A stretch of DNA of 64,000 nt from Octopus sinensis. Its lineage: Eukaryota. Both the position numbers and the translations under genes were made by a program. Under the pieces are notes generated by a model. That model worked only from the letters and a program-made list of their open reading frames with translations, was not told the origin of the DNA and made no database searches. Shown piece after piece: positions 7,369-61,083 of this stretch. The DNA is taken from contig NC_042997.1 in NCBI RefSeq assembly GCF_006345805.1, positions 84,258,001 through 84,322,000 of the forward strand, written 5' to 3'. How positions within the stretch are numbered: position 1 is the first letter of the stretch; every line of letters starts with the position of its first letter.

Positions 7369-7399
7369 TTTTTTTTTTTTTCTCTGGTTTCACTCTGAG

Positions 7400-7708: not shown

Positions 7709-7710
<2 letters not shown>
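7400..7710 (-). mobile_element. CR1/L2-group LINE ORF2 C-terminal fragment
   Basis: Minus-strand translation DYCSQL*SPTSVKLTADLEAIQRRFTKKIVSLQQLSYWERLKQLRLYSLQRRRERY matches the CR1-group post-RT motif. Confidence 0.8.
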
Positions 7711-7775
<65 letters not shown>

Positions 7776-7914
7776 GTATGTATTCCACACATTGAGAATC
7801 CAGACATTTTCAGTATAGAAGACACTTAGTAGTGCTCAAAAGATTCAAACTTAGACTCCGATGTCTTCACGCAGTATCGATTCCGATTATATATGTATAT
7901 ATATCGCCATGTTG

Positions 7915-8117: not shown

Positions 8118-8131
8118 TATATATATATATA

Positions 8132-8169
<38 letters not shown>

Positions 8170-8412
8170 TTAAAAATGAAAGAAAGTTGTAGATGTACAA
8201 TTACTTTCACTGGTTTATAGTTGTTCCTGCTGTAAGAGCTGGATTAAGGTGCGACATCTTGTAGCTTTCTCAGAGCCATTTGAATGAAGTGTGTGTGTGT
8301 GTATGTATGTGTGTACGTGTGTGTGCGTGTATGCATGTATCTCCTTGTCTATTCTTTCACTCTACACGCTTACGTCGCAACCTCAACTGTTCATTATATT
8401 TTCTGCGTGATA

Positions 8413-8460
<48 letters not shown>

Positions 8461-9139
8461 ACGGGGTATATATCAATGTTTCATGCATACATACATTTGT
8501 ATGACTGGAGTATAACATGCTAATTATGAATTGTTTTGTTTCTGGGTAAATCTGTTTCATTTCCCTTCAGGTATTAATGTTATTTGGAAAGCGTGACTAT
8601 CATAGTTCATTCCCGCTGATTAATATTTCTGTTTAGAAAAGACCTAGCAATAATTCATGAAGTGCATGCAGAACAGTGAAAATCCAAAGAATAACAAACC
8701 TATTCATTTTAAATACATTCTGGCATATTCGAGCCTGAATATGCTGATCGCTGCTGCATTTCGTTTCGGAGATGTCATTGGTTCTAATTGCTATCCCCTT
8801 CATATGTGGTGTTTTTTATGGCAAAGCTTCATAATTGTCCACCATTCTGTTCACTAAACAGTGTCAGGGAACATGAGAACGGCATAATTCTTTAGTTTGA
8901 GAAGTAGCAGATCTTTAAACTTGACCACTATTTCTATACATTGCAGATCCCGCTTCAAGATCCTACTCTGGATGTGGGGAAAAGAAAAAGAATCGATTTC
9001 CATATGTAGAATAAATTTCACCCATAAGGCTGAGAGGTAACCACCGCTATGATAAAAGGCCCTTGCTTAAGATGTCTTTCAGCAGGGCGAACACAGGTCG
9101 CATGATTGCGAAGTGATATGCAAAAAAGGCCACAGAAGC

Positions 9140-10072
9140 GCTATTATTAGAAGTAAAAGGTCAGGCTTATGTCGGATGAAAGATTGCAAAGGTAAAGCAC
9201 TGTACAAGAAATTGAAAAGGAATGAAATTGAAAAGAAAAGAATGCATGGTCAATTTCATAGGGATGCTGAAGATAAGACAGACAGAGAAAAAAGATAGTT
9301 GTTGATGACTAAAAGTGATTTAAAACCGGAAGCATAGGCTCTAATCTGTGCTGCCCAAGAGCAAGCACTAAGAACAAACTACATAAAATATAGAATAGAC
9401 AACACAGCAGAAAGTGATAACTGCAGAATCTGTGGACAAAATGGTGAAACCATATGGCATATTACCAGCGAACGTACACCACTAGCCCAGAAGGAATATA
9501 AGAGATGCCACGACAATATAGCCAGGCTTGTCCATTGGACACTTTGCAACAAGTATGGACTTGACAGAGCAAAAAATTGGTACGACCACAAACCTGAAGG
9601 CATCGACGAAAATGGAAATGCAAAGATCCTATGGGATTTTATGATTCAGTGCGACCATGAGATAGAGAATAGGAAGCCGGTGATAGTCTTAATTGAGAAA
9701 GAAAACAAACTATGCTGGATCATAGATATAGCATGCCCAGCTGACAACAAGGTATGCGATAAGGAAAAAAGAAAACTCGAGAGATATGACAGGTTAGCTT
9801 GGGAAGTTAAGCAGTTGTGGTCGATGAAAAAAGTAGCAGTAGTACCAATAATTGTCGGAGCCCTGGGAACAGTGAGCAAAAATGTCGAGAAGTACGTGGA
9901 ACAAATAGGGGCTGCAGTAAGGGTGGATCACTTGCAGAAAACAGCACTGCTTGGAACCGCTCGAATACTCCGGAAGGTGCTCGAAAAATAAGAGTGTTAC
10001 CTTAGTTCACTGGTAGTGAACAGCTAACACTCTAATATATCTCCAGCATTAGAAGCTGTGAAAAGGCAACAA
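9140..10072 (+). mobile_element. R4/Dong-type RLE LINE, 5'-truncated, degenerate
   Basis: MHGQF, AAQEQAL, CRICGQNGETIWHITSE (CCHC), CHDNIARLVHW, RLE region IIDIACP..K..KLERY, GALG, QKTALLGTARILRKVL. Ends at an (AAT)n array. Confidence 0.9.
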
Positions 10073-10089
10073 AAATAATAATAATGATC

Positions 10090-10144
<55 letters not shown>

Positions 10145-10188
10145 TCATGATAATAATAATAATAATAATGATGATGATGATGATGATG

Positions 10189-10252
<64 letters not shown>
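10073..10252. repeat. (AAT)n/(GAT)n array at the 3' end of the Dong-like LINE
   Basis: Directly visible. Confidence 0.95.
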
Positions 10253-10619
10253 TTCTTTGCATCTCTGACACTAGCAGAAGTAGTGGGGGAGCGTCATAGC
10301 CATGAGAGGAATTCTTTGAGGTTTGAATAATTCGCCTCTGGAAGCATGAATGTTTCGCTCAACATCCTTAAACAAACCTTATTCAGGGATCTTTTGAGCA
10401 GGATGGGCTACTCATCCTGGAAAAATTCTGAACCCAACCTGCAAGGTCATGAGCTGTTTGTCTCGATATGAAATCACCATGTTGCGCAAATATGGTTGTG
10501 ATACATGTGCCTGGTGTACACTTATCAGACGGGTAGTCTTGATGGGTATATTGGGCTTCATATATTTGTATCCCATCGTCACTTCGATGGCATGCGCTGC
10601 TCTCTCACTCCATGATAAT

Positions 10620-10830
10620 AATACAAAAGTTTCGTAATTGAAATATTCAAGATGTGGGGCATGAAGTTATAAATTATACCAGTAATAATTGGAGCAATGG
10701 GTATGATAAAAAACATATGATCAAAAAGGTAGAAGCTATACCTCAACTCTCAACACTACACACTATCCAAAAAATAACCCTACTAGGAGCAACACACATC
10801 CTACGCAAAACACCATTAATTCAATAGTTC
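10620..10830 (+). mobile_element. Short 3' fragment of a Dong-like LINE
   Basis: Encodes IPVIIGAMG...IQKITLLGATHILRKT; begins right after GATAATAATA. Confidence 0.7.
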
Positions 10831-11059
10831 AATCCAAATAAAACAATCCACAAACACCATACACACTCTACAGTACATAGTAAATATCCAATAAAATGAG
10901 CAACCCCCACAAATACCCTACAGGTGGGATACCTAACATAACACAACTCACATTACGCACACAACTCACAGTACAAACACTAATTCAACAAAAGACTGCA
11001 ACGGAACTCCATAACAAAACAAAACTGATGCAATACAATACCAGGAGGAGTTTTCACTT

Positions 11060-11460
11060 TTTAATTTTGGTGCAAAGCCTGCAAATTATAAGAAGATCAC
11101 ACTAGGATCGATTACATCGTCCCCAGAGATGAACTGGCACTTATTTCTATCGCCCTTGAAAGGATGAAAAGCAAAGTTCACCTCAGCGAGATTTCAACTC
11201 AGAACGTAAAGAACTGAAAGAAATTCGGCTAAGAATTTTGTTCGATTCGTTAACAACGCTACCAGTAGCAGTTACAATGGTTTCAAATTTTGGCATAGGA
11301 CCAGTAATTTTAAGTGTCCAACTGGTGCTTATTTTATCGAATCCGAAAGGATGAAAAGCAAAGTTAACCTCAGCAGAATGTGAACATAGAAGGTAAATAT
11401 ATATAAAAAAAGCGGAAAAATGACGGTCAGTATTTTATACGACGTGCTAACGTTACTACC
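11060..11460 (-). mobile_element. Two tandem SINE family 2 copies
   Basis: Repeated GAAAGGATGAAAAGCAAAGTT.ACCTCAGC.GA.TT..AAC.CAGAA motif at ~11158 and ~11345. Confidence 0.75.
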
Positions 11461-12119
11461 AAAAACAATAATATTAAACGGAGAGAAAGAATCGGATCCA
11501 AAACAGGCTACACATGTATTCGTAATAATAATTATCTTATTAGGTTATTATTGCTGAAGTTAGAGTTTTTCTTGTTGTTTACAACTTTTGCACGTTCTTC
11601 CTATTTAAAAGCCATATCTGGTGGGTCGTCTGTGGAAGTACGTTGCGCGCGCAATGTCGTCTGCTTTTATCGCTGTTTTGCTTGTTTGTCTTACCTTTCT
11701 TTTTTTTGTGTGTGTCTGTATACAAGTATGTGTGTGTGTGCGTATTTTTAATATTATTATTTCGTTATCAATGAGAAACCCTAACCAGTTCAGCATGACC
11801 TCAGATAAAAGAGAGAAAATAACTCTGCAGTATGTACCTACCAACTGTTGAATGTACGACAGCAAGGATAGTTATCTAGTTTATTGATAAGGACGACGTA
11901 TCAACTTAGGGTTATAACTGATTAAATTATAAGAAGTTGGGTATGAACAAAAAAAAGAGAGAGAGAGAGAGAGAGAGAAGAGAAAGAGAGAGAGAGAAAG
12001 AGAAGAGAAAGAGAGAGAGAGAGAGAGAGATAGAGAGAGCGAGAGAGAGAGTGAGAGAGAGGGGTTGATTGGCAAGAAGGGGCACCACTGAATACATTTA
12101 GATGATGAGATAGAGAAGT

Positions 12120-12219
12120 NNNNNNNNNNNNNNNNNNNNNNNNNNNNNNNNNNNNNNNNNNNNNNNNNNNNNNNNNNNNNNNNNNNNNNNNNNNNNNNNN
12201 NNNNNNNNNNNNNNNNNNN
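12120..12219. other. Assembly gap (100 N)
   Basis: Run of N. Confidence 1.
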
Positions 12220-12389
12220 GATTCGCTCTTTTAGTAACTAGTTTGGTGTCAACTTCATCTTGAAGCTACCTAAGCGGATTTAGTTTTCACATCCATACAT
12301 CTCGTACGCATTTTACTAGTAACGTTTAACCTAAGCTATCACGTGTACCGGTGACTAGAGCTAACTCACAATATATCTTTTCTGGTATC

Positions 12390-13190
12390 AGTACAAGTTC
12401 TGAAATTTTGTGGGGAAAGTGCTAGTCGATTACGTCAATCCCAGTGTGCAACTGGTACTTATTTTATCGACCCCAAATGGATAAAAGGCAAAGTCGAGCA
12501 AAGTGGAGTTTGAACTCAGAACGTAAGGACGGACGAGATATCGCTAAACATTTTGTTCGGTGCGGTAACGATTCTTATTTCTTATTTCTTTACTGCCCAC
12601 AAGGGGCTACACACAGATGGGACAAACAAGGACAGACAAACGGATTAGTCGATTACACCGACCCCAGTGCGCAACAGGTACTTAATTTATCGACCCCGAA
12701 AGGATGAAACTCAAAGTCGACAACGGCGGAATTTGAACTCAGAACGTAGCGGCAGACGAAATACCTATTTCTTTACTACCCACAAGAGGCTAAACACAGA
12801 GAGGAAAAACAAGGACAGATGAACGGATTAAGTCGATTGTACGACCTCAGTGCATAACTGGTACTTATTTAATCGACCCCGAAAGGATGAAAGGCAAAGT
12901 CGACCTCGGCGGAATTTGAATTCAGAACGTAACGGCAGATACCAGCTCGCCGCCCTATCTGAATGTTAATAATCATTTTTGCTATAAGCACGAGACCTCA
13001 AATTTACGGGGAGGCAGGGTAATCGATTACATCAGTCCCAGTACTCAACTGGTACATATTTTATTAATACCGAAAGGATGAAAAACAAAGTCGATCTCGG
13101 CGGGATTTGAGCTCAGAACATAAAAGATAGAGGAGAATACACTAAACATTTTATCTGGTGCGGTAACGATTCTGCTAGCTTGCCGCTTTA
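12390..13190 (-). mobile_element. Cluster of four same-orientation SINE family 2 copies
   Basis: TATCGACCC...AAAGGATGAAA..CAAAGTCGA...GAACTCAGAACGTA recurs at ~12465, ~12690, ~12870 and ~13065. Two copies carry the extra TAAAGAAATA/CCCACAAG segment. Confidence 0.85.
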
Positions 13191-13759
13191 TCTCAATGTA
13201 AATAATAATAGCATAATAGCAATAATAATGATTTATGTAGAGAATCGTTGGTGTGTTGGTGGTTAAATAAGCCAACAAATAAAAGATGAAATATGTAACT
13301 GTGTAAGATGGCTGTTTGATCATTAGTGACTTACTGTGCACAAGAGAAATAAGTTGGAAAGGATCCACAATCAAAGTCTTCACAGGCAAGGAACAGAAAT
13401 AAAAATTCAACTGGGCGAGAAACAACGGTAGGGTAATCGGAGTAGGCATATTTCTAATAACGAAATGGACAGATAAAGTAAGTGAGGTAGTCACAGCGAG
13501 CGACAGGTTTGTGAACCTTAAGATTGTTGTAGACAATTCAACAGTGATATTTATATTTACTTACGCATCACATCCAGGACTGTCAGATGATCATCAGGAC
13601 CACTTTTATAGAAACCCTTTTGTAGACTGTGGATTGCGATTGCTTTTGACTCCGCCATTACAGATGATGATTTTAATGGATGTGTTGGACAACTCCATGA
13701 GGACCTTTCTGGTTATGGTATGTGAAATAAAGAGGAATCAAGACTCCTAGAGTTCTATG

Positions 13760-15070
13760 ACGCAAAGGTTTAAATTATGTACAGTATAAACTTTAAGAGA
13801 CAAGCTAACTACTTGACCAATCACCTATCATGGGAAGACACAATTTCGATAGCTCTTATTTTCACCTAGAAACAGGATATGCAGATCAGTAGGAATGCTA
13901 AATCAATTCTAAGTAAACAATACATCACCCAGCATAGATCTGTGATTGACAACATTGATTAGTGATTAACTAGACAGACTTTGAAAAAAACAACTTGGAG
14001 AAAGAAGACTAGAAAGCTAAAAAAAAAAACAAAAAAAACCTCCCGGTAGTTCGTAGATTCAGAGAACCATAAATGACACTTATTTCCGCAGTGAAGAGAT
14101 TAAAACTTATTAGATAGAAGACAACTGGGAGATTTCACAAGATAAGCGTCCAATGCTTATCTATATCAAATGTGTGGTTGATAAAAAGTTCCAATCAGAC
14201 CAAAAGTGTTGTGATGGTGAAATGATGAGTAGTTAGAGCCATAATGGCTAAGAGATAGGACTGGAAAGACTGGAGAGAATGGGAAAAACAGAGAGAATTT
14301 TATCAAATAGCTAGAAGAGAAGCTCGGTGTCAAATATATTTAACTAGGGGAAAAAGTAGAAAGATTTATAAATGTTCTGCGACGTTTGGACCAAAGGAGT
14401 GAAATATTTTAGATTGCAAGACAGTGTGCCAGGGTTAATCGTGACGTCGTTGGGGAAATATGTATTGATAATAATGGTGGCATAGGCACACTCGCCTTTA
14501 ATAATGATAAAAAAGAAAGAGTTATGGAAGTGATATTATTAGTATCGTTAATTGTAGAATATGCCTTTCAAGATGATCGATCAACAGAGAGACCAACCAT
14601 TTATATTGACAACATTATAGTCAGATCGAAGTTAGGGAATGTACCTAGTCCGTCCATTAAAAATTACCGTTAAAATGTTTAAAATATTCGACAGTGTAGG
14701 GCACTAGCGAAACACCCGCATAGACAATCAAGTAGTACTGAAAGGTGTCATACCCAGTGATTGGTGCTGTTGTTTGATAGTGAAATGCAATAAGGACAAA
14801 GTAAGAAAATACAAAAGCATCAACTTGTTGGATTAGATTATAAAAGTTACAGAAATTGTTACTTGAAAACTGATGAAGAAAAGGATTAACCTTGATGAGA
14901 TGCATTAAGATTTGTACGTAGGAATGGTGCTATTGATCCATATTCCTTGTAACTACAAGAGAAGCACTCAGAGAGAGTAGGATCCCTATCTTAGAATTCG
15001 TCGAAAACCTTTGACAGGGTCCTTCAGTTTGTTATCCGGTGGTCTGCAGGAAAAGGTTTTAGCCCTCAAG
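13760..15070 (+). mobile_element. Degenerate RTE-clade LINE (APE C-terminus, linker, RT N-terminus)
   Basis: Broken frames give ITYHGKTQ, ITQHRSVID, YQIARREAR, VEYAF, GRNGAIDP and KTFDRV, in the RTE ORF order. Confidence 0.7.
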
Positions 15071-15309
15071 AACATTCATGCTGACATGGGTGCTACATTA
15101 GGGGGTGACGCGCCAGCTTTATCAACAGCGTTGAGGAGATTCTGCACTGAATATCTAGATAGATTGTTGGATAGATAGCTAAATAGAGAGAGAGAGAGGG
15201 AGGGAGAAAGAGAGACAGAGATTGATATTAACAGACTGTCAGATAGACAGACAGATATATAGATAGATAGATAGATTGAGAGAAGAAGAAGAAGATAGAT
15301 AGATAGATG

Positions 15310-15376
<67 letters not shown>

Positions 15377-15658
15377 GGATAGATATGAATGTATGGATGT
15401 ATGCATGTATGTATATATGTTTGTATGCAAGTATGTAGTTGAGGATGTAAAATTTCTTGAGGATGATGCACTCACACGAACCATTATACATACATCAAAT
15501 GAATCAGAAAATGAATTTTCAATCAGCAAAATACCTCATTTGTTGACTAGACTAAAAAAAAAAACAACACACACGCACATACATACATACATATACATAC
15601 ATACATACATACATACATACATACATACATACATACATACACACATACATTCGTGCAT

Positions 15659-15689
<31 letters not shown>

Positions 15690-16094
15690 CACACATATAC
15701 ATAATGCCAGTCATTATGTCTTGGGTATTTAGCAAACAGAAACGCCGAATTCATAACCCAAGTGAATATCCTAGCTTTCACGCATGACGACTTACAATCC
15801 ACTGCGCTCCAAATCCGTTCTCCGAAATCGTGTCCGTTTCCTACGAGAAGTCAACCAGGCCAGTAGAATTGTAAATCGTAAGGTAGATAATTAAGGCAGG
15901 AACATGAAAGGAAAAAATACCAAGATCAAATGTTTCCGAAAATTATTAAGATTTTGATTTAGATTTAGTGAATAAATAAATAAAACAAAACTCTTTTTCT
16001 CTCACTCCTTTCTTTTTCCCCCTGATTACCTCCCTTGGTTTCTCTCTATTTTTTCTCTCTTCCTCAAGCAATTTTACCTTCGTATACTAACACC

Positions 16095-16096
<2 letters not shown>

Positions 16097-16125
<29 letters not shown>

Positions 16126-16625
16126 CTTCTTCTTCTTCTTCTTCTTCTTCTTCTTCTCCTCCCTCCCCTCCTCCTCCTCCTTCTTCTTCTTCTTCTTCTT
16201 CTTCTCCTCCTCCCTCCCCTCCTCCTCCTCCTTCTTCTTCTTCTTCTTCTTCTTTCTTCCCCTTCTCCTCCTCCCTCCCCTCCTCCTCCTCCTCCTTCTT
16301 CTTCTTTTCTCTTCTTATCTTCTTCTTCTTCTTCTTCTCCTCCCCCCCCTCCTCCTCCTCCTCCTCTTCTTCTTCTTCTCCCCCCCTCCTCCTTCTTCTT
16401 CTTCTTCTTCTTCTTCTTCTTTTCTCTCTCTCTCTCCCGCTCTCTCACTCTCTCGTACACCTCCTTTACATTGTAACACCCACACTCTCAAACAACAACT
16501 TACAAACTAACAAGTACACTTTCTCTCTCTCTTTCTTTATCTCTCTCTCTTTCTCTCTCCATCTCTCCCTCTCTATCTCTGTCTTTCCATCTCTCTCTCT
16601 CTCTTTCTCTTTCTCTCCCTTCTTT
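16097..16625. repeat. Long polypyrimidine tract: (TTC)n/(TCC)n then (CT)n
   Basis: Directly visible; one A/G-containing interruption at ~16455-16520. Confidence 0.95.
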
Positions 16626-17319
16626 CCTTGACTGATATGTCTTCAGTAATATCCCTCAACGAATACTACTTCTCTATCACGTGAGATCTATTCATTTCTC
16701 TCTCTTTCTGTCGCTCCTTCTCTCACGCTCTTTATCTTTTTGCTTCTTTCTTTTACATAGCTTCTCATTCACTGCACAAACACACATTCTACTCTTTCTT
16801 ACTGTTTTATCTTCCGCTCTAATCATTTACGATATGGCCGATAGACAAACACATCATATTCGCCTAGCAGTTTCATATACCACAAGTTCAGATCTTATGA
16901 AGGTTCAAATCTTATGGATATTTTTTGTGCTTCAGTTTATATATATTATTACTTATTTTATATCACAATTTCTGCTCATTCTCGTTGATTGAGGTTTCCG
17001 ACTAACTAACAACTCGCTCATTGTTCTCTGCCAGCGAGATTGACAAAAGAAGTGTCTTTAACTTGAGGTTGCACAACTATCTCACATGATTCGTAAGCAC
17101 TGTTCTATTGCAGAACTTCGCCGATATACCTAAGTGAAAGACACACCCACATACATGCATGCATACAGACATATTGATATATATGTCAATTTATATTTGA
17201 GTTTTCCTTGAATTCCTTCTAAACCTTTTACTCATGAGACATTTCTTATTACTTGGCATTAACTCTATAATACGCATTGCGTAAGTTGATCTTAAATTGT
17301 TTCAAAGGTCGACTTTGCG

Positions 17320-17452
17320 TTTCATCCTTTCGGGGTCGATAAATTGAGTACCAGTTGTACACTGGGGTCGGTGTAATCGACTAATCCGTTTGTCTGTCCT
17401 TTTTTGTCCCATCTGTGTGTAGCCCCTTGTGGGCAGTAAAGAAATAAGAAAT
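17320..17452 (+). mobile_element. SINE family 2 (long-tail subfamily), 5'-truncated
   Basis: GTCGACTTTGCGTTTCATCCTTTCGGGGTCGATAAATT...TAGCCCCTTGTGGGCAGTAAAGAAATAAG. Confidence 0.8.
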
Positions 17453-18872
17453 TGTGATATGAACTTGCAGCAGGTCTCTGCCTCAATGTTAAACCCAACT
17501 GTTATCTTTGTAAACAAAATGTGCATAAACAGATAAACATGATCTTTCAAAATGAGTGATACGCTTTTAATAATCTGGCCAATCAAATTAAAAGAAACAC
17601 ATCCTGGATTTTCGAGTGATGACGTCATCACAGGTCTCTTCAACCAGGTTCATTCTGGGGGTCAATAAAAGAGACAACGTCTGAAGAGAATGTAGCAGAG
17701 AATTTGACCGGGGGATGGTTTATCAGGAATCTAGCAACGTCTACAGCGAAGCATGCTAGCCTGAAAATTCTCGATCTTGACAGTAACCGTGGTTGTAGCT
17801 CTCAAAATGTTGGATAGTAATAAGAATTGTTAATATTACCATTAAAGCACTCACCGTTTCCACAAACATATTTCTAGCTACTCTTAGAGCATGCATTTGC
17901 TTCTGGCATGAAGAGAACTCCTCAACGTACCTTGGTTTTCTTTCCCTACCAATAACATAGATGAATAATTAGAACCGAAGATTACTGTTCTCATTCATCT
18001 AATAACATACACTTATTACAAGCTCTTCCTGTAATGTTATATACAATGCATACTGATTAGGACTAACCAAAAAACGTTTTCAGTTCTTCCAGCTATTTTA
18101 CGGTTTCCTCCAGCATATGTATTTTGAACAATATTCACTTTTATCGTTAGAATGTACTCAGTGTATGACGATTATAACAGTTAGTAAAGCTCTGACTTTC
18201 CTTCAACAAAATCAAATGATGCTTGTTGAGTTTCTGCAAACACTGTGGAAATAATCTGAATAAAGAACCAGAAGGTTCAACTGCAATTTGGAAGATAAAG
18301 AAAGTTTAACACCATGCAAGGTATGAATGTATCCATTACTTTCTTGATTGTCGTCCTGCGTGAGTTATAGAGCTAGCTAAATGTGTCCCAGTTTGCGACC
18401 TGTTTAGTTTTCTTCGATTGGTAAAGCTCATTGATCACGTTGAATATTAAGTGTAGAATTTTAGGAACTCTGATAAGTTAGTAGACTTAAGTAATATTCT
18501 TAACTTGTAAGAAGATGGTTGCTGTGCAATAGAAAGATATAAATGGGCTCTTTAATTTAGAGTTAATCAGACGATTGTGATAGGAGACGAAATGCAGAAG
18601 GCTGCTCGTAGAACGATATCAAAATGTTTGTAGAGACAATATGTCGGTCAGGGTTATAGAGGAGTGAAGGTACAAACTGATGTAGATAGTCCAGAATGAA
18701 AGATAAAATCTGGGATAAAAGAGAGGAGAGTAAAGATGAAAGATGCATTAATAGTAACTTCCTTTTCTTTCCCCTGTATCACTGGTTTTCTTTCTTCAGC
18801 AGCACGTTGTTTTCTATCATTGAGTATGTGTGAGTGTATGTACGTGTATGTACGCAAAAAGATACAAACATA

Positions 18873-18963
<91 letters not shown>

Positions 18964-19309
18964 ATCCTATCACTTTATTCTGTTCCTTTATAAACTTTCA
19001 GTTCGCTTTCTAATTTACTTACAATATAAGTGCACTCAAATACATACACACGCTGTCCTTGGCTTTGATGTCATTCCATATAGATAAATATTACTTTGCA
19101 TTTATTTATCTACTAATATAATTGGCAGCATTACTCTCTCATTGTCTTTCTCTTTCTCTCTCTCTCTCTTTCTCTCTGATTGTCCATCCCACTGATATTT
19201 GCATCAAAGGCAAGAAGATGCATTATCTATGCTATCTTTGTATTTTATTGAAAGACACCAGATCGCTTAAGTAGCAGAATACGAAGTAGAAATGTACATA
19301 ATTTTAGCT

Positions 19310-53989: not shown

Positions 53990-54620
53990 CGAGATAATGC
54001 TCTTCAAAAAGCAGTAAAATATGACAAGCGATGCAGACTTTGTGGAGTTCACACTGAAGATATCACCTACATCATAAGCGGTTGACTGAAAATGTCATTA
54101 CCGCATTATCTACCGATGGGACGTGATGTTGTAGCTAGGACACACTATTGTGAAACCCGTCGGAAGGATAATCCCGAGGACAAATAATAAGAACCTACAA
54201 TATGGTAGAAGCCATAACCACTCATAATAAAAAGGAATACTGGTGGAATGTCCCTGTGAAAACCTCAATAAAATGTAAGCACAACAGATCTGATATAATG
54301 ATTTGGGATAGAAAAGAGAAACTGCAGTGGTGGAAATTAGTTACCCAGCCGATGTTAACATAAAGCTGAAAATCAGTGAAAAAAGAGAACACCTACGCTG
54401 AACAATTGAAGAATCTGCAGAGACTCTATCCAGATTACAAGTTCAGGCTTATACCTGTAATTATTGGGGCACTGGGATATTTAACACACTGCCTAAATAC
54501 CAGTCTTAAGAAATTGGACTTCTCAGAACCAGATAGGGGAGAGCTAATTCGAAGACTACAAATCCAATCCATCACGGGAACTGTAAACATCTGTAAAACT
54601 TTCCAGAAGTTTATCATTTA
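53990..54620 (+). mobile_element. R4-like RLE LINE fragment related to lineage 2 (more diverged)
   Basis: CRLCGVHTEDITYIISG, YWWNVPVKTSIKCKHNRSDIMIW, LQRLYPDYKF..IGALG, QIQSITGTVNICKTF. Confidence 0.8.
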
Positions 54621-54701
54621 AATATATATCAGCATGTCTAGATATGCAACTATATGCATGAGAATACATAAAACATACAAATCCGGACACACACACAAAC
54701 A

Positions 54702-54766: not shown

Positions 54767-55469
54767 CACACACACACAAACTCACACACACACACACACA
54801 CATATGCACGCACACAAAAACATAAAGATACCTCGCGTTAAGGAATTATTGATTTCATTAAAATAACAATTTTACTGTAATGTGGAATTACTCAAAGCAA
54901 AACATATTTTCGCATCAATTTCCTCTTCACTGAATGAAGTTATTGCAAAATAGGGTTCGCGCTACAGGTGTTCACATTACAGAAAGATTTTCTTGGAGGT
55001 ATCGTGGTGTATGTCTTTGTTTGTGTGTGAGTGACTATATGCGTGTCAGTGAGTGTATACATATTTTTTATTGTAGATGTATAGGTGTATAAGTATATAA
55101 GGAAATGAGGACACATACACACATACACCTCCCCACCTTATATTTACACAAACTGGTGCATGCCCTAAATTTTTCCAAATATCAAAGACGTTTCTGAAAA
55201 TATTTTAGCCGTATATTTCATATTTTCTTAATCCAGAGTGAAGTTGTATATTCTTCAGTAGAAATAGAAACAAATAAGTAGGCAAATACTTGAGCGAAGC
55301 AAAGAAATACATAATGAAATAAATATATTTCACAACAAGTAATAAATAAATAGCTAACTATATAGGCGCAGGAGTGGCTGTGTGGTAAGTAGCTTTCTCA
55401 CCGAACGGACGTGTTTTTTTTCGCTCCGGCAAATGTCACGTTTTAACGTGAATTACTGAACATTTTACG

Positions 55470-56060
55470 TCAACAGGTGGGGCGTTCGAATATTGTTGGA
55501 AGCCTAGTGATGTTTATTGCCTGCCGTTAATACTTTTTAACATTAACAACGTTACTTAGTGTTAATAATTTTTGCGCGTAATAAACTTCACTTTGCTTCG
55601 GATATATTTTTTCTACCTGTTGGCGTATTTAAAAGTCTCACTTTTTAGAGAGAAATTGTGTTTTTTGAGGAAGGCGTAGCCCCTCCTCAGAAATATTTTT
55701 GACTCATTGGAGTACCAATTTTCACACTTGGATTACCACACGTGGAATATTGAACTGTTTGGCAACAGCAGGTAGGATTTTTTGAATGTTTTTGGAGGCT
55801 TAGCGAGGTTTATTGCCTGCCATTAATACTTTTTGGCGTCAACGTTAATTAGCGTTAATAATTTTTTGCGAATAATAAACTTCGCTTTGCTTCGGATATA
55901 TTTTTCTGCCTGTTGTATTTAAAATCTCACGTTTTAGTGAGAAGTGTGTTTTTTGAAGAGGCGTAGCCCACATCAAAAATAATTCGATTCATTGGAGCAC
56001 CAATTTCGCTTTGGATTACCACACGTGGAATATTGCACCTTTGGATTACCAGGAGGCACC
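55470..56060 (+). repeat. Two ~297-bp tandem monomers in the 5' UTR of element A
   Basis: TTATTGCCTGCC..TAATACTTTT...CTTTGCTTCGGATATATTTTT...GGCGTAGCCC...TTGGATTACCACACGTGGAATATTG at ~55514-55755 and ~55811-56036. Confidence 0.85.
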
Positions 56061-56311
56061 AAGGATATTCGTGGATTGTTTTTACAAGCACCAGAATTAC
56101 CAAGGATTGCCGTGACGTTTGGCCTGGACTACCTTTTCGGCCAAAAAAAAAAATATTTCTTTGCCACATTTGAACTTCTTCCTCTAGCTATCCTTCATTT
56201 GAACTCCGAACTGTTTTTATTGTAACTCTCGTTTCCATTTTGTTTTTGCTTCTCTCTTTCTGTCACTTTTGTGTTTTTCCTATTCGAACTGTATTAATAT
56301 TTTTGTTAAAA

Positions 56312-57298
56312 ATGGCAAAGGAACTGATTGTTTGGGAGCTGGAAGCTCCCCAAAAATATGTCAAACAGCTCGAGGATAAGACCGTGGTACTGAGGACTTA
56401 TTCAAGGTTGCTCAACGCTATCATGGTTTTTCCGAAGGCGAAAATTATTGAAGAGCTGGCAGACCACATGCCAGCCGTGAAATATATCACGCGGGGAGCC
56501 AAATACGCAACGGTTTGGTTGCTGTTTGACTCCCCAAAAGATGCTTGCAATTTTGCAAGCCAGCCCATTGAGGGCAAAGAAATCTTGTTTCTCCCTAGTT
56601 ATAAGGGAGAAAAATTGACAAAACTATGGGTCTGCGGCCTGCCACCCGGCATTGAACCCGAGTGGATAGAAGACTCTATCCGCCGGGGTCTGGGTGACAG
56701 GGACGCAAAAATCCTAAATGTCAATATACTGCCTGCGGCTGATTGGGAAGGGTCTAAGGCTACCTTAACCCTATGGACCCAGTCAGCCAAGAGTCTGGTT
56801 TTGCCGGACTTTTTGAGAATGGCCGGGTCCAAGTATCCGGTGATGCTCGAGGGACGCCCCCCCAAGTGTCACCTGTGTTTGGAGACCGGCCACATCAAGA
56901 AGAGCTGCCCCAGGGACCAGAGTAGGATCCTGGAGCGGCTGATATTGGAGCCTCTCCCTGCCTCTTCAATGGAGGGAGAGAAGCAAAGTGAGGAGGGAGA
57001 AGAATCCTCCTCCAAAAGAAAAAGACAGGTGGGGAGCAATGGCGACCCACCAAAGGACCTGAAAGCTGCGGGAGAGGAGAACCCGGTGCGCACAGCTCCG
57101 GAACCTCAGCCTCCCGTGGCCCAGGGCCAGAAGAAAAAGAAAAAAAGAGAAACGGAGCGTCGCCGGCGGATTGCTACACGCAGACGGCGGTTCCCGAGTA
57201 TCCCGGGTCCTCTCAGGCGGGTGTGCCGCCTGAGGGACAATTCGTGGAAGATTTTGTGTTCCTCTTTTTTAAAGGAAAAAAGGTGGAAAGCACTATAA
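56312..57298 (+). CDS. ORF1p-like nucleic-acid-binding protein (two RRM-like regions, one CCHC knuckle, basic Lys tract)
   Basis: ATG at 56312. RNP-like ATVWLLF and LWVCGLPPGIEPEWI; CHLCLETGHIKKSC is C-x2-C-x4-H-x4-C. Homologous to the copy B frames. Confidence 0.8.
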   Translation: MAKELIVWELEAPQKYVKQLEDKTVVLRTYSRLLNAIMVFPKAKIIEELADHMPAVKYITRGAKYATVWLLFDSPKDACNFASQPIEGKEILFLPSYKGEKLTKLWVCGLPPGIEPEWIEDSIRRGLGDRDAKILNVNILPAADWEGSKATLTLWTQSAKSLVLPDFLRMAGSKYPVMLEGRPPKCHLCLETGHIKKSCPRDQSRILERLILEPLPASSMEGEKQSEEGEESSSKRKRQVGSNGDPPKDLKAAGEENPVRTAPEPQPPVAQGQKKKKKRETERRRRIATRRRRFPSIPGPLRRVCRLRDNSWKILCSSFLKEKRWKAL

Positions 57299-57519
57299 GA
57301 AAAGTGAGAAAGAGAGGACGTTGGGAGGTAATCCAGTCCTGTACGGAGAACCCCGAGTGGCCTTCGCAGTTAGCTGCGGGGGTCGTGGGAAGGGTTGATC
57401 TACACAGGATCGTGGGTTCCTGCCCAGCGGACTCCTTCGAGATTATACCTCTGGATACCGGCCTGACCAGCGGGTATTGCCTCAATGAGGCAAGAGCAAT
57501 GGTCGGCCGGGTCACATAG
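57181..57519 (+). CDS. Conserved C-terminal module of ORF1 in the -1 frame (frame open 56992-57519)
   Basis: VPPEGQFVEDFVFLFFKG...TENPEWPSQ...YCLNEARAMV aligns with copy B VPPTKELNVLVLFYRG...TQDPEWPPQ...YVLREAWLMV. Confidence 0.6.
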   Translation, partial: QTAVPEYPGSSQAGVPPEGQFVEDFVFLFFKGKKVESTIRKVRKRGRWEVIQSCTENPEWPSQLAAGVVGRVDLHRIVGSCPADSFEIIPLDTGLTSGYCLNEARAMVGRVT

Positions 57520-57853
57520 GCGGTGTAACATCCTTGTAACATGTGGAAGAGGAGGTTTATTGCCTCCTCTAAAATTTGTAAAATTTGTAATTCAATGTTA
57601 ATTCAAACATTTTTGCAACAGGTTGAAGAGGAGGTTTATTGCTTCCTCTAAAATTTGTAATTTGTAATCATTGTATTAAATGTAATTATTGAACATTGTT
57701 TTAGAGAAGCGAGAGTCGGCGGGCGCTTTTTGACTTCTCCCATCACCATCTTCATCCACCACCACCATCATCCATTAATGTCCTTGTCCAGCCCGTAGCT
57801 ACTCTGTGTGCTGCCCTAGTGGAAAAATTGTTGAAATAAAGTAGCTTGCTAAC

Positions 57854-60121
57854 ACACATGCACAGTTAGTCAGTTGCTTCCTGTTCAGCCAGAGTGGACG
57901 CGAGTCAACCAGCTCCGTCCAATTAAAGAAAAAAGACCAAAAACGGAAAGTTGTCGAGGTAAGTGATTTTGTTTATTGTGAGTTGGGCATAATTTATTGC
58001 GTGCCAATTATTATTTCAGTAAGTTGTGTCCAACTCTGAGACAATTCGCCTGCTCTCGGCGGCTGCCGTTTTTGTGTTCATTGAAAAAAAAAGAAAAAAC
58101 AGTGGAGGGGCGTATCCTCGGAATTCAATACAGTTACTGTTAAAATTACCGTTGGCGGTAGCCAGTGCTGTGTTTGGGTTTGTTGAATTTATTCCCTTGT
58201 CAGAGTACTTCGCAAGAAAATTATAAAAATAAGCCACTATTGGATTACCTTTCGGACCCATTTTTGTGGAGGTTGTGTTGCAGTTGCGGCGTTCCAGGTT
58301 CAACCCAGGCCGGGAGTACCGCAAGGCCAGAATATTTTTGCTGTGTTTTTTCTGTTTATTAACTTTCTTTTGAACTTCATTTAACCCCCCCCCCCTTTTG
58401 TTTTTTTTCTTTATTGCGACTTTCCGTTGATTTCTTCCCTTCTGTTGTGCTTTCTCCTTTTTGTTTTTTCAAAAATCTATCAAATTTTATTTGGACTTTT
58501 GAACTTTTTTCTTCTTGCTTTTTGAGTTTAATTTGAATATATTTAAAAAAAAACATGGCAATGAAAAATAACAAAATTTTGGAATGGGAAATCATACCAC
58601 CTAAAAAGTGGTTAAAAGACCGTGAAGATAGGACGGTGGTGTTGAGAACCTACTCCAAGGCACTCGACACCATCGCCCTATTCGAAAAGACGGCAATTGA
58701 AAAGGAGTTGGAAGAGTATTTGCCAACAATTAAATTCATTTCCAGGGGTGTCAAATATGCAACGGTGTGATTGCTATTTGACACCCCTGAAGAGGCTTGC
58801 AAATTTGCTAGCAAACCCCTGGAGGGTAAGGAAATCTTATTCCTGCCCACGTACAAAAAAAAAAGAAATTGATGAAAGCTTGGATTTGCGGGCTGCCACC
58901 CGACATAGAACCCGAGTGGATAGAGGAGACTATCCGCCGGGGTCTGGGTGGCAGCGAAACTAAGCTCCTTAATGTAAAAGTTCTTCCTGCGGCTGCTTGG
59001 GTTGGGTCAAAAGCAATTTTGACCCTGTGGACCCAATCAGCCAATCTGGTTCTTCCAGATTTTTTGAAAATGGCCGGGTGCAGGTACCCGGTGATGCTTG
59101 AGGGTCGCCCCCCTAAGTGTCATCGGTGCTTGGAGTCCGGCCACATAAGAAGAACTGTCCTCGGGAACAAAATAGGATCCCGGAACAGTTAAGTAAAACC
59201 CCTCTAGAAGAGGGAACGGTAACGGCCGAGAAAGCAGAGGACTCCTCAAACAGAGGCCGAAAGAGGAAGGTGAGCAACAATGGGTGCTCACCAAAGGATA
59301 ATAGGGATGAGGAGAGGAAGGCGAATCTTCCAGCCACGGAGGAGACGCACCCTCCCTCAGTTGAAAAGGGAAAAAAAAAGAAAAAGAGGAAGAAAACGGG
59401 ACATTACCGGCTGTCAGTGTAGCACCGGAATGTCCCGGAACTACGTCGGTTGGGGTTGTGCCACCGACAAGAGAAGGAATACCGTTGGCGGGAACTGTGC
59501 CGCCAACGAAAGAACTGAACGTATTGGTCCTCTTCTATAGAGGAGGAGAAATTGAAAAAAAAAATGATGGAAGAGCACCAGAAGGGAGCACCTTTAGCCT
59601 TCACACAGGACCCCGAATGGCCTCCGCAGATAGCTGTGGAGGCCGTGACGTTCGACGTAACGCTTGGGCTAAAGGAGCTCAATGAAGATTATAGCTTGGT
59701 CCCGGGCGACGCGAACTCGGAACTTGATTACGTTCTGAGGGAGGCGTGGTTGATGGTGGAGGGCGCGGGCACAAGCTATTTCGAGGACGATATGTAATTA
59801 TTGAACTGTTAGTATTAATAATGGACTGCTAAGTCCAAAAATTGAAAAATTGTAAGAGGTTTAATACCTCGTTTTGTATTTTTATTAATAATGGACTGCT
59901 AAGTCCAAAAATTGGAAAAATTGTAAGAGGTTTAATACCTCGTTTTGTGTTTATCTTTAAAAAGAACAATGTTTTAGAGAAGCGAAAGTCGGCGGGCGTT
60001 TTTTGTCTTCTCCCATCCTTATCATCTGTCTTTCATTATCATTCACTTCATTAATGTCCTCGTCCAGCCCGCAAAGCTAACTTAATCTGTGTACTGCCTT
60101 TATGGCAAATGTTTTGAAATA
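57854..60121 (+). mobile_element. ORF1-only non-LTR retroelement, copy B (2268 bp), 15-bp TSD AAGTAGCTTGCTAAC
   Basis: TSD at 57839-57853 and 60122-60136; same ORF1 and conserved 3' end (TTGAAATA) as copy A; no APE, RT or LTR. Confidence 0.85.
58555..59797 (+). pseudogene. Disrupted ORF1 of copy B
   Basis: ATG at 58555; TGG>TGA stop at 58768-58770; frameshifts near 58860, 59145, 59375 and 59560. The reassembled protein aligns with copy A at roughly 65-75% identity over the RRM-CCHC part (counted by eye). Confidence 0.8.
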
Positions 60122-61083
60122 AAGTAGCTTGCTAACCAACCACATGGTTCCGGGTTCAGTCCCACTGCGTGGCATCTTGGGCAAGTGTCTTCTGCTATAG
60201 CCCCGGGCCGACCAATGCCTTGTGAGTGGATTTGGTAGACGGAAACTGAAAGAAGCCTGTCGTATATATGTATATATATGTGTGTGTATATGTGTTTGTG
60301 CGTGTGTGTTTGTGCCCCTAGCATTGCTTGACAACCGATGCTGGTGTGTTTACGTCCCCGTCACTTAGCGGTTCGGCAAAAGAGACCGATAGAATAAGTA
60401 CTGGGCTTACAAAGAATAAGTTCCGGGGTCGATTTACTCGACTAAAGGCGGTGCTCCAGCATGGTCGCAGTCAAATGACTGAAACAAGTAAAAGAGTAAA
60501 AAGAGTAAAAGAGTATATAACCAGGTAAATAAAAAAAAGTAATACAAAAATACACAACGCGTGCCCTGACAGTCTCTTATCTTAAGGGAGATAATTAGTT
60601 CCCGATCAATTCAAGTGGGAGTGAAAGTTTGAATTTTAAATCAAAGAATGATGAAGGTGCAAGAATGTATTTCTATTTTATGTTAGTTTCTTTCTCACAC
60701 ATAAACACATCAAAATTTCTAGTCGTAGATACATAGATAGATCATTGAAACTCAGAATTTATTACACGGAGATGAGCACACAAGTATGGTGTATTGAATT
60801 ATGAGTAGTTTTTATCGTGGATTTAAGTTGATTTTTTTTGTTTCCATTTGGTACATTTTCTGTTCTATTTTGCTCTTAATACTTCCTCTCCACCTTCGCC
60901 TTTTTTTTTGTTTTACTTCTCTTATCTACTTTGCTATTTTTGTTAATATACGTCTCTGAAGCACCTGGTGACCTTTCCACTTTCTATCTATCTCGTTGTT
61001 AACATTGCATATTAAAAAAATAGGCCCACTTTTTGTACGCAAATCGTAAGTACGTACGCGTAAGTTTGTTAGAACGTGTACAT

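What the first reader, a model, noticed from the sequence alone, without database searches (positions are those of the whole stretch)
55396..60121. Complete elements encoding only ORF1 (RRM+CCHC) with no endonuclease or RT: a half-LINE-type non-autonomous family
Seen: both elements run 5' UTR, then ORF1 (plus a short conserved C-terminal module), then a ~320-bp 3' UTR, then the TSD. There is no room for an APE or RT, and both TSD-bounded copies share this layout, so it was mobilised in this form. Substitutions between A and B are mostly conservative (K/R, I/L, D/E, S/T) and there are many silent changes, which suggests selection on ORF1 in both lineages. Established: ORF1-only retroelements exist (mammalian HAL1, Drosophila HeT-A) and rely on a partner's RT. 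Inference: this is a cephalopod analogue that keeps its own RNP protein and borrows a site-specific ORF2. I know of no such family described with a SINE target, but could not search.
Basis: partly seen in the sequence, partly recalled or inferred. Interest (0 to 1): 0.8.

Follow-up and report, generated by a model that had tools for sequence, protein, structure and literature searches.

The report
ORF1-only retrotransposon targeting an octopus SINE
Two neighbouring copies of a small octopus jumping gene keep only the RNA-binding protein of a LINE, have no copying enzyme of their own, and always land at one exact spot inside another repeat: a new example, in a new animal group, of a known kind of genomic hitch-hiker.

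Summary
Window 55397-60121 contains two head-to-tail elements, A (about 2.44 kb) and B (about 2.27 kb). Both are inserted at the same nucleotide of one SINE-like repeat, and three copies of a 15-bp target sequence bound them. Each has a 5' UTR, an ORF1, a roughly 120-codon downstream module and a roughly 315-bp 3' UTR. Neither contains endonuclease or RT sequence. A confident AlphaFold model shows two tandem RRM-like domains followed by a CCHC knuckle. Two more copies in Octopus sinensis (C and D) sit at the same SINE position and also lack ORF2. ORF1 dN/dS is 0.17-0.22 at dS of about 0.8-1.3 (0.34 at dS 0.37 for the closest pair), so ORF1 was under selection while the ORF2-less lineages diverged. 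Distant ORF1 homologues (20-28% identity) are the first ORFs of full cephalopod L1/Tx1-type LINEs carrying APE, RT and zf-RVT domains. The HAL1/HeT-A analogy is therefore supported. No autonomous partner was found. B and D are dead copies. The "C-terminal module" lies in the -1 frame in all four copies, after an A-rich tract and a hairpin. I rate this a new variant of a known kind, of moderate interest.

The parts
55365..55402 (+). 5' part of the target SINE-like repeat. It ends in the upstream copy of the target duplication (55388-55402, AAGTAGCTTtCTcAC, 13/15 match).
   Evidence: Alignment with intact SINE copies.
55397..57838 (+). Element A, complete and ORF1-only. The true 5' end lies between 55397 and 55403.
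55485..56038 (+). Two ~270-bp direct repeats ('monomers') in A's 5' UTR: 55485-55755 and 55781-56038, 83% identical.
   Evidence: Self-BLAST.
56312..57298 (+). A ORF1, intact, 328 aa. RRM-like domain 1 is about 56381-56602, RRM-like domain 2 about 56609-56848, and the CCHC knuckle 56864-56911. The conserved part ends in the K-rich tract at about 57150. The frame-0 extension 57155-57298 is not conserved in B or C.
57130..57153 (+). A-rich, Lys-coding tract where conservation switches from the ORF1 frame to the -1 frame.
57153..57197 (+). GC-rich hairpin region directly after the A-rich tract. It is well formed in B (59397-59437), C and D, and weaker in A.
57151..57519 (+). Downstream module of A in the -1 frame: 122 codons plus a stop, with no ATG.
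   Evidence: Stop-free in 0.4% of shuffles. Protein-guided pN 0.42 is below pS 0.77.
57520..57838 (+). A 3' UTR. It contains two ~65-nt hairpin-bearing repeats (57527-57591 and 57606-57668) and then a conserved tail (57686-57838) with hairpin GAGAAGCG...CTTCTC. It ends in GAAATAA, which contains AATAAA.
57839..57853 (+). Middle copy of the 15-bp target sequence AAGTAGCTTGCTAAC. It is the only SINE sequence between A and B.
57854..60121 (+). Element B, complete in length but decayed. Its 5' end is homologous to those of copies C and D.
58555..59385 (+). B ORF1 remnant. It has TGA at 58768-58770 in place of Trp, a +2 indel in an A-run at about 58850, and a -1 indel at about 59150.
59395..59797 (+). 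B downstream module, in the -1 frame relative to B's local ORF1 frame. It carries one further shift in an A-run at 59553-59562.
59798..60121 (+). B 3' UTR. It contains two 69-nt repeats (59813-59881 and 59883-59952, 97% identical) and the conserved tail 59964-60121.
60122..60480 (+). Downstream copy of the target sequence (60122-60136) followed by the rest of the SINE-like repeat.

Best explanation
A and B are two independent insertions of a non-autonomous, ORF1-only family descended from cephalopod L1/Tx1-type LINEs.

Shown:
- The family's standard form is 5' UTR, ORF1 (two RRM-like domains, a CCHC knuckle and a K-rich tract), a ~120-codon module in the -1 frame, and a ~315-bp 3' UTR with a conserved ~170-nt tail. 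There is no ORF2.
- It inserts at one nucleotide position of an abundant SINE-like repeat and makes a ~15-bp target duplication.
- ORF1 evolved under purifying selection while the ORF2-less sublineages diverged.

Inferred:
- The element is transcribed from its own 5' UTR.
- Its ORF1 protein coats its own RNA in cis.
- Endonuclease and reverse transcriptase are supplied in trans by a related autonomous LINE that recognises the conserved 3' tail and nicks the SINE site. Integration is by target-primed reverse transcription.
- AATAAA sits at the very last bases of the element, so transcripts probably end a few tens of nucleotides into the flanking SINE. That read-through sequence could pair with the nicked target and help fix the exact 3' junction.
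- B inserted into one copy of the target duplication made by A, or the reverse. This explains the tandem pair separated by only 15 bp.
For: Structure, duplications and empty site.

No ORF2-like sequence in the window.

Four copies:
- C is L001 9488-10975.
- D is L005 about 15740-17680.
- All four 5' junctions fall after SINE ...AAGTAGCTTGCT(A/T)(A/C). A and B have identical 3' junctions.
- The three host SINE copies have different flanks and different head sequences.
- B, C and D start at homologous nucleotides.

Selection: dN/dS is 0.17-0.22 for A-B, A-C, A-D, B-C and C-D at dS 0.8-1.3, and 0.34 for B-D at dS 0.37.

ORF1 fold: pLDDT is 82.7, above 90 for residues 10-200. There are two beta-alpha-beta-beta-alpha-beta domains plus a knuckle. 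Foldseek top hits are NONO/SFPQ, IMP3 RRM12 and hnRNP A1 UP1, at E about 1e-4 and probability 1.0.

LINE ancestry: an exhaustive profile search gave 82 hits; the ten whose sources were looked up are mostly cephalopod. In L002, L003, L004 and L007 the homologue is followed directly by an ORF2. The L003 ORF2 has Exo_endo_phos, RVT_1 and zf-RVT domains and matches human L1 ORF2p at E 2e-71.

Available source of ORF2: 13 recently active L1-Tx1 families are annotated in O. vulgaris (PMC13282606).

Target preference: preference for other transposons and small-RNA genes is documented for the Tx1 clade (PMC4494074). The related L002 LINE is itself flanked by (ATT)n on both sides.
Against: - No autonomous element with the same 3' tail or the same SINE target was found. 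The tail has no blastn match in the related LINEs fetched. It shares only a short motif, GCCCTTGTGG followed by an A-rich end.
- Only four copies could be examined, and C and D lack their 3' parts.
- B and D are dead copies, so current activity is unproven.
- Copy number and length distribution in a whole genome could not be measured, because no octopus genome can be searched by DNA with these tools.
- Repbase and Dfam were not searchable.
Confidence: 0.72

Rival explanations
1. The propagating unit is a full-length autonomous SINE-targeting LINE. A, B, C and D are dead-on-arrival internal-deletion products that never propagated as ORF1-only elements.
For: Related LINEs place the ORF2 start right after the ORF1 stop, so clean ORF2 loss is mechanically easy. 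Another relative, L006, also shows ORF1 followed directly by a 3' UTR, which suggests such deletions recur. Only four copies were sampled.
Against: A and B differ at dS about 1.1 and have unalignable 5' UTRs. They nevertheless share the same junction of module stop, two hairpin repeats and conserved tail. D also continues from the module's stop into B-like UTR. Three independent identical deletions are unlikely. No ORF2-bearing relative closer than 28% identity in ORF1 exists among 1.8 billion cluster representatives.
Confidence: 0.1
2. The family is ORF1-only and trans-mobilised, but target choice is not set by a site-specific partner endonuclease. It comes mainly from the element's own RNA, through read-through SINE sequence pairing with the target, and/or from its ORF1 protein. 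The ORF2 would come from a LINE that is not SINE-specific.
For: AATAAA occupies the last bases of both A and B, and there is no poly(A) tail, so transcripts must end in flanking SINE sequence. The 3' junctions are identical to the nucleotide while the 5' junctions vary by a few bases. No SINE-targeting autonomous LINE was seen in any fetched locus. Co-transcribed target sequence is reported to strengthen target-specific integration of other non-LTR elements (PMC4494074, discussion).
Against: Nothing direct. In known target-specific APE-type LINEs the endonuclease contributes to specificity (my own knowledge). Four of four insertions at one site would need very efficient RNA guidance.
Confidence: 0.1
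3. The intact copies (A, and C which equals LOC115225585) are domesticated host genes derived from a LINE ORF1, like L1TD1. Selection would reflect a host function rather than transposition.
For: dN/dS is low. C is annotated as a protein-coding gene in O. sinensis.
Against: Several non-orthologous copies have target duplications, conserved UTR tails and one shared insertion site. Half of the copies are decayed. A sits next to a dead copy inside a SINE. This is transposon behaviour, not that of a single conserved locus.
Confidence: 0.03

Closest known systems
HAL1 ('half-L1') of mammals
   Same: It is a non-autonomous derivative of an L1-clade LINE that encodes only ORF1p and depends on a partner's ORF2p. 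HAL1 arose several times independently (PMC5753468). The element here has the same logic, and ORF1 is kept under selection.
   Different: - HAL1 carries the mammalian Type II ORF1p (coiled coil, RRM, CTD). This element has a Type I-like ORF1p (two RRM-like domains plus CCHC).
- HAL1 has no fixed target. This family hits one nucleotide position of a SINE.
- The hosts differ (cephalopod versus mammal), and the two arose independently.
HeT-A of Drosophila telomeres
   Same: It is a Gag/ORF1-only non-LTR element with a specialised target that relies on an RT encoded elsewhere. It forms head-to-tail arrays.
   Different: HeT-A belongs to the Jockey clade and has a different Gag architecture. It targets chromosome ends and serves a host function. 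Here the target is an interspersed SINE, and no host role is indicated.
Target-specific Tx1-clade LINEs (Tx1L into Tx1D, Keno into U2 snRNA genes, Kibi/Koshi into microsatellites, Tx1-Mar into Mariner-N4_AMi)
   Same: - They belong to the L1/Tx1 group with RRM/CCHC-type ORF1.
- They insert at a fixed position of a multicopy sequence, including other transposons (PMC4494074, PMC5203782).
- The cephalopod relatives found here have APE, RT and zf-RVT domains. One sits in (ATT)n and one forms tandem arrays.
   Different: Those elements are autonomous (ORF1 plus ORF2). This family has no ORF2. In the literature I could search, a SINE was not listed among Tx1 targets.
Cephalopod L1/Tx1-type LINEs found here (L002 and L003 octopus, L007 Argonauta)
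   Same: The ORF1 is homologous (profile E 1e-16 to 1e-18, 20-28% identity), with the same RRM-RRM-CCHC core and a K-rich tract. The 3' ends share a short motif, (G/C)CC(C/T)T(T/A)(G/A)TGG followed by an A-rich AATAAA end.
   Different: - They carry a 1100-aa ORF2 directly after ORF1.
- Their ORF1 ends in an in-frame 'FPxDVG' module. I could not show this module to be related to the -1-frame module of A-D.
- Their targets differ.

Membership tests
ORF1-only non-autonomous LINE derivative (HAL1-type, in the functional sense) | Encodes a protein homologous to the ORF1 of autonomous LINEs. | tested here: met
   A profile search gave 82 hits. The homologues in L002, L003, L004 and L007 are each followed by an APE/RT ORF2.
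ORF1-only non-autonomous LINE derivative (HAL1-type, in the functional sense) | No endonuclease or reverse transcriptase anywhere between the ends. | tested here: met
   tblastn with a related ORF2 finds nothing in the window. The ORF list and Pfam show no APE or RT. The element is only 2.27-2.44 kb long.
ORF1-only non-autonomous LINE derivative (HAL1-type, in the functional sense) | The ORF2-less form itself was copied: several insertions share the layout and have target duplications. | tested here: met
   A and B are complete and bounded by target duplications. D has the module's stop followed by UTR. C is compatible but truncated. The four copies occupy three different SINE copies. The sample is small.
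ORF1-only non-autonomous LINE derivative (HAL1-type, in the functional sense) | ORF1 is under purifying selection within the ORF2-less lineage. | tested here: met
   dN/dS is 0.17-0.22 at dS 0.8-1.3, and 0.34 for the closest pair.
ORF1-only non-autonomous LINE derivative (HAL1-type, in the functional sense) | Shares its 3' end with an identifiable autonomous partner. | tested here: inconclusive
   The tail has no blastn match in the fetched LINEs. Only a short shared end motif is seen. No octopus genome is searchable by DNA here.
HAL1 proper (mammalian L1 derivative) | Type II ORF1p (Transposase_22: coiled coil, RRM, CTD) derived from mammalian L1. | tested here: not met
   Pfam gives no Transposase_22 match. 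The model shows two RRM-like domains plus CCHC. The host is a cephalopod. This is an analogue of HAL1, not a member.
L1/Tx1 group of non-LTR retrotransposons | RT phylogeny places the element in the L1/Tx1 clade. | not testable with these tools
   The element has no RT. The ORF2 of ORF1 relatives has APE, RVT_1 and zf-RVT domains and matches human L1 ORF2p best, at E 2e-71 against 1e-24 for R2. No reference RT tree was built.
L1/Tx1 group of non-LTR retrotransposons | Type I ORF1p: at least one RRM plus a CCHC zinc knuckle (Khazina and Weichenrieder classes, as cited in PMC5203782). | tested here: met
   AlphaFold pLDDT is 82.7. Foldseek hits are tandem-RRM proteins. The motif is CX2CX4HX4C, with Pfam zf-CCHC at E 0.049 in A and 3.6e-6 to 1.6e-4 in relatives.
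Target-specific non-LTR retrotransposon | Independent insertions at the same position of a repeated target sequence. | tested here: met
   Four of four copies lie after ...AAGTAGCTTGCT(A/T)(A/C) of the SINE. A and B have identical 3' junctions.
SINE | Short, non-coding, with a Pol III promoter head derived from a small RNA. | tested here: not met
   The element is 2.3 kb, protein-coding, and has its own long 5' UTR. It is the target that is SINE-like. Even the target's head is not recognised as tRNA by ARAGORN or Rfam.

The most novel reading that the evidence does not exclude
The family may be a self-sustaining third-tier parasite: an ORF1-only element that lives on a LINE's ORF2 and inserts into a SINE. 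It would carry its own targeting and expression devices.

(a) Targeting. The transcript ends in flanking SINE sequence because AATAAA is the element's last hexamer. The RNA itself would then guide the exact insertion site.

(b) Expression. The ORF1 protein would be made in two forms by programmed -1 frameshifting or ribosome sliding on the Lys-coding A-rich tract, stimulated by the hairpin that follows. The evidence is:
- All four copies keep the module in the -1 frame at the same 114-117-nt spacing.
- There is no ATG in that frame.
- The module stays open in A and B.
- The hairpin has a z-score of -3.1 to -3.4 in B and C.
Probability: 0.2. Interest if true: 0.7.

Novelty: new variant of a known kind. 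Interest (0 to 1): 0.5.

Why it matters
ORF1-only 'half-LINEs' are known mainly from mammals (HAL1) and from fly telomeres (HeT-A). A Type I (RRM-RRM-CCHC) version in a mollusc, with strict insertion into a SINE, would show two things. First, losing ORF2 while keeping a selected ORF1 is a recurrent strategy across LINE types and phyla. Second, it can be combined with target specificity.

It also gives a compact natural system of about 2.3 kb for three questions:
- What does ORF1p contribute in cis?
- How is a partner's ORF2p captured?
- Is the target chosen by the endonuclease or by the RNA?

For octopus genomics, SINEs make up 11.6% and LINEs 12.9% of the O. vulgaris genome. The family documents three-level nesting of parasites and a class of LINE-derived 'genes' that annotation pipelines call as host proteins, such as LOC115225585.

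Tried and rejected
- Pfam on ORF1 and on the module gave only a sub-threshold zf-CCHC hit. There was no RRM, DUF4283 or Transposase_22 match.
- AlphaFold on a 4-sequence alignment was useless (pLDDT 35). It worked only after the exhaustive search supplied 57 sequences.
- The module had no hit in 5.8 billion proteins.
- hhalign and a custom HMM against the relatives' C-terminal 'FPxDVG' module scored no better than shuffles.
- BLASTP and phmmer of the module against a related ORF2 found nothing. I therefore reject both 'ORF2 remnant' and 'shown homologue of the relatives' C-terminus'.
- The nucleotide-level codon-position test on the module showed no third-position excess (54/52/54). Only the protein-guided alignment and the open-frame test support coding.
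- The exact-protein look-up of A's ORF1 found nothing on record.
- Metagenome scans with the 3'-tail motif and with ORF1 found nothing.
- ARAGORN and Rfam did not recognise the SINE head as tRNA. I therefore do not call the target 'tRNA-derived' on tool evidence.
- Rfam found no known RNA family in 55300-60500.
- The HAL1 paper by Bao and Jurka (PMC2923044) is not held.
- I first suspected that the -1 frame came from homopolymer errors in long-read assemblies, because nearly identical tandem LINE copies in L003 differ at A-runs. The identical 114/117/114/114-nt spacing in four diverged copies makes independent errors unlikely. An ancestral frameshift mutation is still not excluded.


Full report
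**1. What is in the window**

Reading 55000-60600 and aligning the two halves shows two related elements lying head to tail.

They interrupt one copy of a short repeat that occurs more than ten times in the window. An uninterrupted copy (window 1-300, minus strand) reads ...GTGTGGTAAGTAGCTTGCTAACCAACCACATGG....

In the interrupted copy:
- The repeat's head ends at 55388-55402 with AAGTAGCTTtCTcAC.
- Element A follows and ends at 57838 with ...TTGAAATA.
- The 15-mer AAGTAGCTTGCTAAC follows at 57839-57853.
- Element B runs from 57854 to 60121 and also ends ...TTGAAATA.
- The same 15-mer recurs at 60122-60136 and runs on into the rest of the repeat.

B therefore has a perfect 15-bp target duplication. 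A has 9 exact bases, or 13 of 15. The two 3' junctions are identical to the nucleotide.

**2. Anatomy**

Both elements have the same layout:
- A long 5' UTR: 915 bp in A, including two 270-bp monomers, and 701 bp in B. The two UTRs cannot be aligned with each other.
- ORF1.
- A further conserved coding-like module.
- A 3' UTR of 319 bp in A and 324 bp in B. Each has two copies of a 65-70-nt hairpin-bearing unit, different in A and B. A tail of about 170 nt follows that is 77-78% identical between them.
- The tail contains a conserved hairpin, GAGAAGCG...CTTCTC. It ends in an AATAAA hexamer with no poly(A) run.

A's ORF1 (56312-57298) is intact. B's has a TGA at 58768-58770 and two frameshifts, so B is a dead copy.

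There is no room for an ORF2. tblastn with the 1132-aa ORF2 of a related octopus LINE finds nothing anywhere in the 64-kb window.

**3. More copies**

- The word-indexed protein search found a single close relative, LOC115225585 of Octopus sinensis, at 59% identity.
- Its locus, L001, is a third copy, C. A SINE head ends ...GTAAGTAGCTTGCTT. A 5' UTR follows whose first bases resemble B's, then an intact 281-aa ORF1 and the start of the module. The copy is cut off by unrelated DNA at about 10975.
- A profile search picked up a chimeric gene model, P0012. Its locus, L005, holds a fourth copy, D. D sits at the same SINE position and has the same 5' start. Its ORF1 is decayed, the module runs to its stop, and a few B-like UTR bases follow before unrelated DNA.
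- The three host SINE copies have different flanks and differ in their head sequences. Together with the tandem pair in one SINE, that makes four independent insertions, all at one position.
- A composite 'SINE plus insert' copied as a unit is excluded, because only the 15-mer separates A from B.

**4. Selection**

Nei-Gojobori estimates on the structured 205 codons are as follows.

| Pair | dN/dS | dS |
|---|---|---|
| A-B | 0.18 | 0.8-1.3 |
| A-C | 0.18 | 0.8-1.3 |
| A-D | 0.22 | 0.8-1.3 |
| B-C | 0.17 | 0.8-1.3 |
| C-D | 0.22 | 0.8-1.3 |
| B-D | 0.34 | 0.37 |

Half of the A-B mismatches are at third codon positions.

The reasoning from this is:
- A and B share the same ORF2-less junctions although their UTRs have diverged to neutral levels.
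- The ORF2-less state therefore predates their split.
- ORF1 was consequently under purifying selection while in that state.

The higher B-D value fits post-insertion decay of two dead copies.

**5. What ORF1 is**

- Pfam gives only a sub-threshold zinc knuckle, on CHLCLETGHIKKSC.
- An exhaustive HMM search of 1.8 billion cluster representatives gave 82 hits at E below 1e-3, with 20-28% identity. The ten whose sources I looked up came from O. bimaculoides, O. sinensis, O. vulgaris and Argonauta hians, plus unnamed Logan, ENA and JGI assemblies.
- With these as an alignment, AlphaFold gives a confident model: pLDDT 82.7, above 90 for residues 10-200. It shows two consecutive beta-alpha-beta-beta-alpha-beta domains, at residues 24-97 and 100-179, and then the knuckle.
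- The best Foldseek hits in the PDB are all tandem-RRM proteins: NONO/SFPQ, IMP3 RRM12 and hnRNP A1 UP1, at E about 1e-4 and probability 1.0. TM-scores are low because the two domains are oriented differently.
- This is the 'Type I' ORF1p architecture of RRM(s) plus CCHC described for plant L1 and Tx1-type elements (PMC5203782).

**6. The relatives are LINE ORF1s**

- In L003 (O. vulgaris) the homologue sits in a tandem array of full-length elements. Each ORF1 is followed 6 nt later by an ORF2 with Exo_endo_phos, RVT_1 and zf-RVT domains. Its best PDB match is human L1 ORF2p, at E 2e-71.
- L002 (O. sinensis) has ORF1 followed by decayed APE/RT. The element is flanked by (ATT)n on both sides.
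- L007 (Argonauta) has ORF1 followed by a full ORF2.
- L004, a short-read contig, shows ORF1 and then an ORF2 start.

The family therefore descends from cephalopod L1/Tx1-type LINEs. At least some of these are themselves target-specific. Thirteen recently active families of this group are annotated in O. vulgaris (PMC13282606). Target preference for small-RNA genes, microsatellites and other transposons is a known trait of the Tx1 clade (PMC4494074).

**7. The downstream module and its frame**

Conservation between copies runs in the ORF1 frame up to a Lys-coding A-rich tract. It then continues in the -1 frame, for example NGASPA / NGTLPAV / NRALPAV. The frame-0 continuations are unrelated and stop after 0-48 codons.

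Evidence that the frame relation is ancestral:
- The distance between an anchor in ORF1 and the first module codon is 114, 117, 114 and 114 nt in A, B, C and D.
- The relation is therefore not four separate homopolymer errors.

Evidence that the module is coding:
- It has no ATG.
- It is stop-free over 122 codons in A, matched by 0.4% of shuffles. In B it is open apart from one A-run shift.
- A protein-guided codon alignment gives pN 0.42 against pS 0.77.
- Against this, a nucleotide alignment shows no third-position excess.

Evidence for an RNA structure at the junction:
- A hairpin directly follows the A-rich tract. Its z-score is -3.1 in B and -3.4 in C. It is present in D and weaker in A.
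- One compensatory change and several G-U changes are seen.

This is the layout of a -1 frameshift signal. It would also fit ribosome sliding on an A-tract. An ancestral frameshift mutation with a slowly decaying tail is not excluded. I put programmed recoding at roughly 40%.

The module shows no detectable similarity to three candidates:
- the in-frame 'FPxDVG' C-terminus of the relatives;
- ORF2;
- any protein in the large database.

**8. Mechanism**

Shown: the ORF1-only structure, target duplications of about 15 bp, one fixed target site, a conserved 3' tail, and a selected ORF1.

Inferred:
- Transcription starts from the element's own 5' UTR. A has promoter-like monomers, as some L1s do.
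- ORF1p binds its own RNA in cis.
- A related LINE's ORF2p is captured through the 3' tail.
- The SINE is nicked and reverse transcription is primed from the target.
- The poly(A) signal is the element's last hexamer, so the RNA should carry downstream SINE bases. These bases could pair with the target and set the exact 3' junction.
- A second insertion into one copy of the duplicated target yields the A-B tandem.

**9. Comparison and novelty**

- Functionally this is a HAL1-like element: ORF1-only and dependent on a partner (PMC5753468). It also has HeT-A-like target restriction.
- It is not a member of either family. Its ORF1 type, clade and host all differ.
- Its nearest autonomous kin are Tx1-type target-specific LINEs.
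- I found no description of an ORF1-only Tx1-type family, or of a SINE-specific one, in the searchable literature. Repbase and Dfam could not be checked.
- I rate it a new variant of a known kind.

**10. Limits**

- The sample is four copies.
- No partner was found.
- No genome-wide census or expression data were available.
- The SINE's tRNA origin is not confirmed by the tools.

Noticed in passing
window 57130-57200 (A); 59371-59440 (B); L001 10824-10905 (C); L005 17252-17330 (D): In all four copies the conserved module after ORF1 is in the -1 frame, at a fixed 114-117-nt spacing. It follows a Lys-coding A-rich tract and a hairpin (z -3.1 to -3.4 in B and C). The layout resembles a programmed -1 frameshift or A-tract sliding signal. 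An ancestral frameshift mutation is not excluded.
   Followed up: partly
window 58768-58770 (B) and L005 about 16651-16653 (D): B and D, which are non-orthologous copies of one subfamily, share a TGA at the Trp codon that is TGG in A and C. Their dN/dS is nevertheless 0.34, not 1. This could be a parallel mutation (my rough estimate is about 10%), a stop already present in a still-mobile master copy, or a UGA recoded to Trp by A-to-I editing, which is extensive in coleoids. None of these was tested.
   Followed up: partly
L003 (O. vulgaris OX597840.1) 6058-19297: There is a head-to-tail tandem array of at least three nearly identical full-length L1/Tx1-type LINEs (ORF2, ORF1, ORF2, ORF1, ORF2). 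One unit's 3' end runs straight into the next unit's 5' UTR, with no target sequence visible between units. The copies differ by indels in A-runs, which may be assembly errors or hypermutable tracts.
   Followed up: partly
L002 (O. sinensis CM016872.1) 9720-9780 and 15345-15385: A related LINE, with decayed ORF2, is flanked on both sides by (ATT)n microsatellite. This suggests a microsatellite-specific member of the same cephalopod LINE group.
   Followed up: no
L006 (O. vulgaris OX597833.1) 5971-7650: A distant ORF1 relative (P0010, 379 aa) is followed directly by a ~500-bp 3' UTR whose end resembles that of the L003 LINE. No ORF2 lies within 6 kb. This may be a second, independent ORF1-only derivative. 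Its boundaries and copy number were not determined.
   Followed up: partly
window 55485-56038; 57527-57668; 59813-59952: Each element has internal tandem units. A's 5' UTR has two ~270-bp monomers (83% identical). Each 3' UTR has two 65-70-nt units carrying a short hairpin. The units are unrelated in sequence between A and B but sit at the same position.
   Followed up: partly
P0033, P0039, P0059 (unnamed ENA/JGI contigs) and P0005, P0018, P0020 (cephalopods): Many long members of this ORF1 family end in a conserved C-terminal module with the motif Y..LK..FP.DVG. No Pfam family covers either this module or the RRM-like core, so the family appears to lack a curated model.
   Followed up: partly
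L005 10001-36638 (gene model P0012, 'K02A2.6-like'): The annotated O. sinensis gene model joins a piece of the decayed ORF1 of copy D to an integrase (rve) fragment across 26 kb. It is probably an annotation chimera of two transposons.
   Followed up: no
window 54376-54621 (+): An 81-aa ORF (…IPVIIGALGYLTHCL…) lies just upstream of the SINE, next to (CA)n repeats. It looks to me like the conserved C-terminal tail of another retroelement protein. Pfam gives no match.
   Followed up: partly
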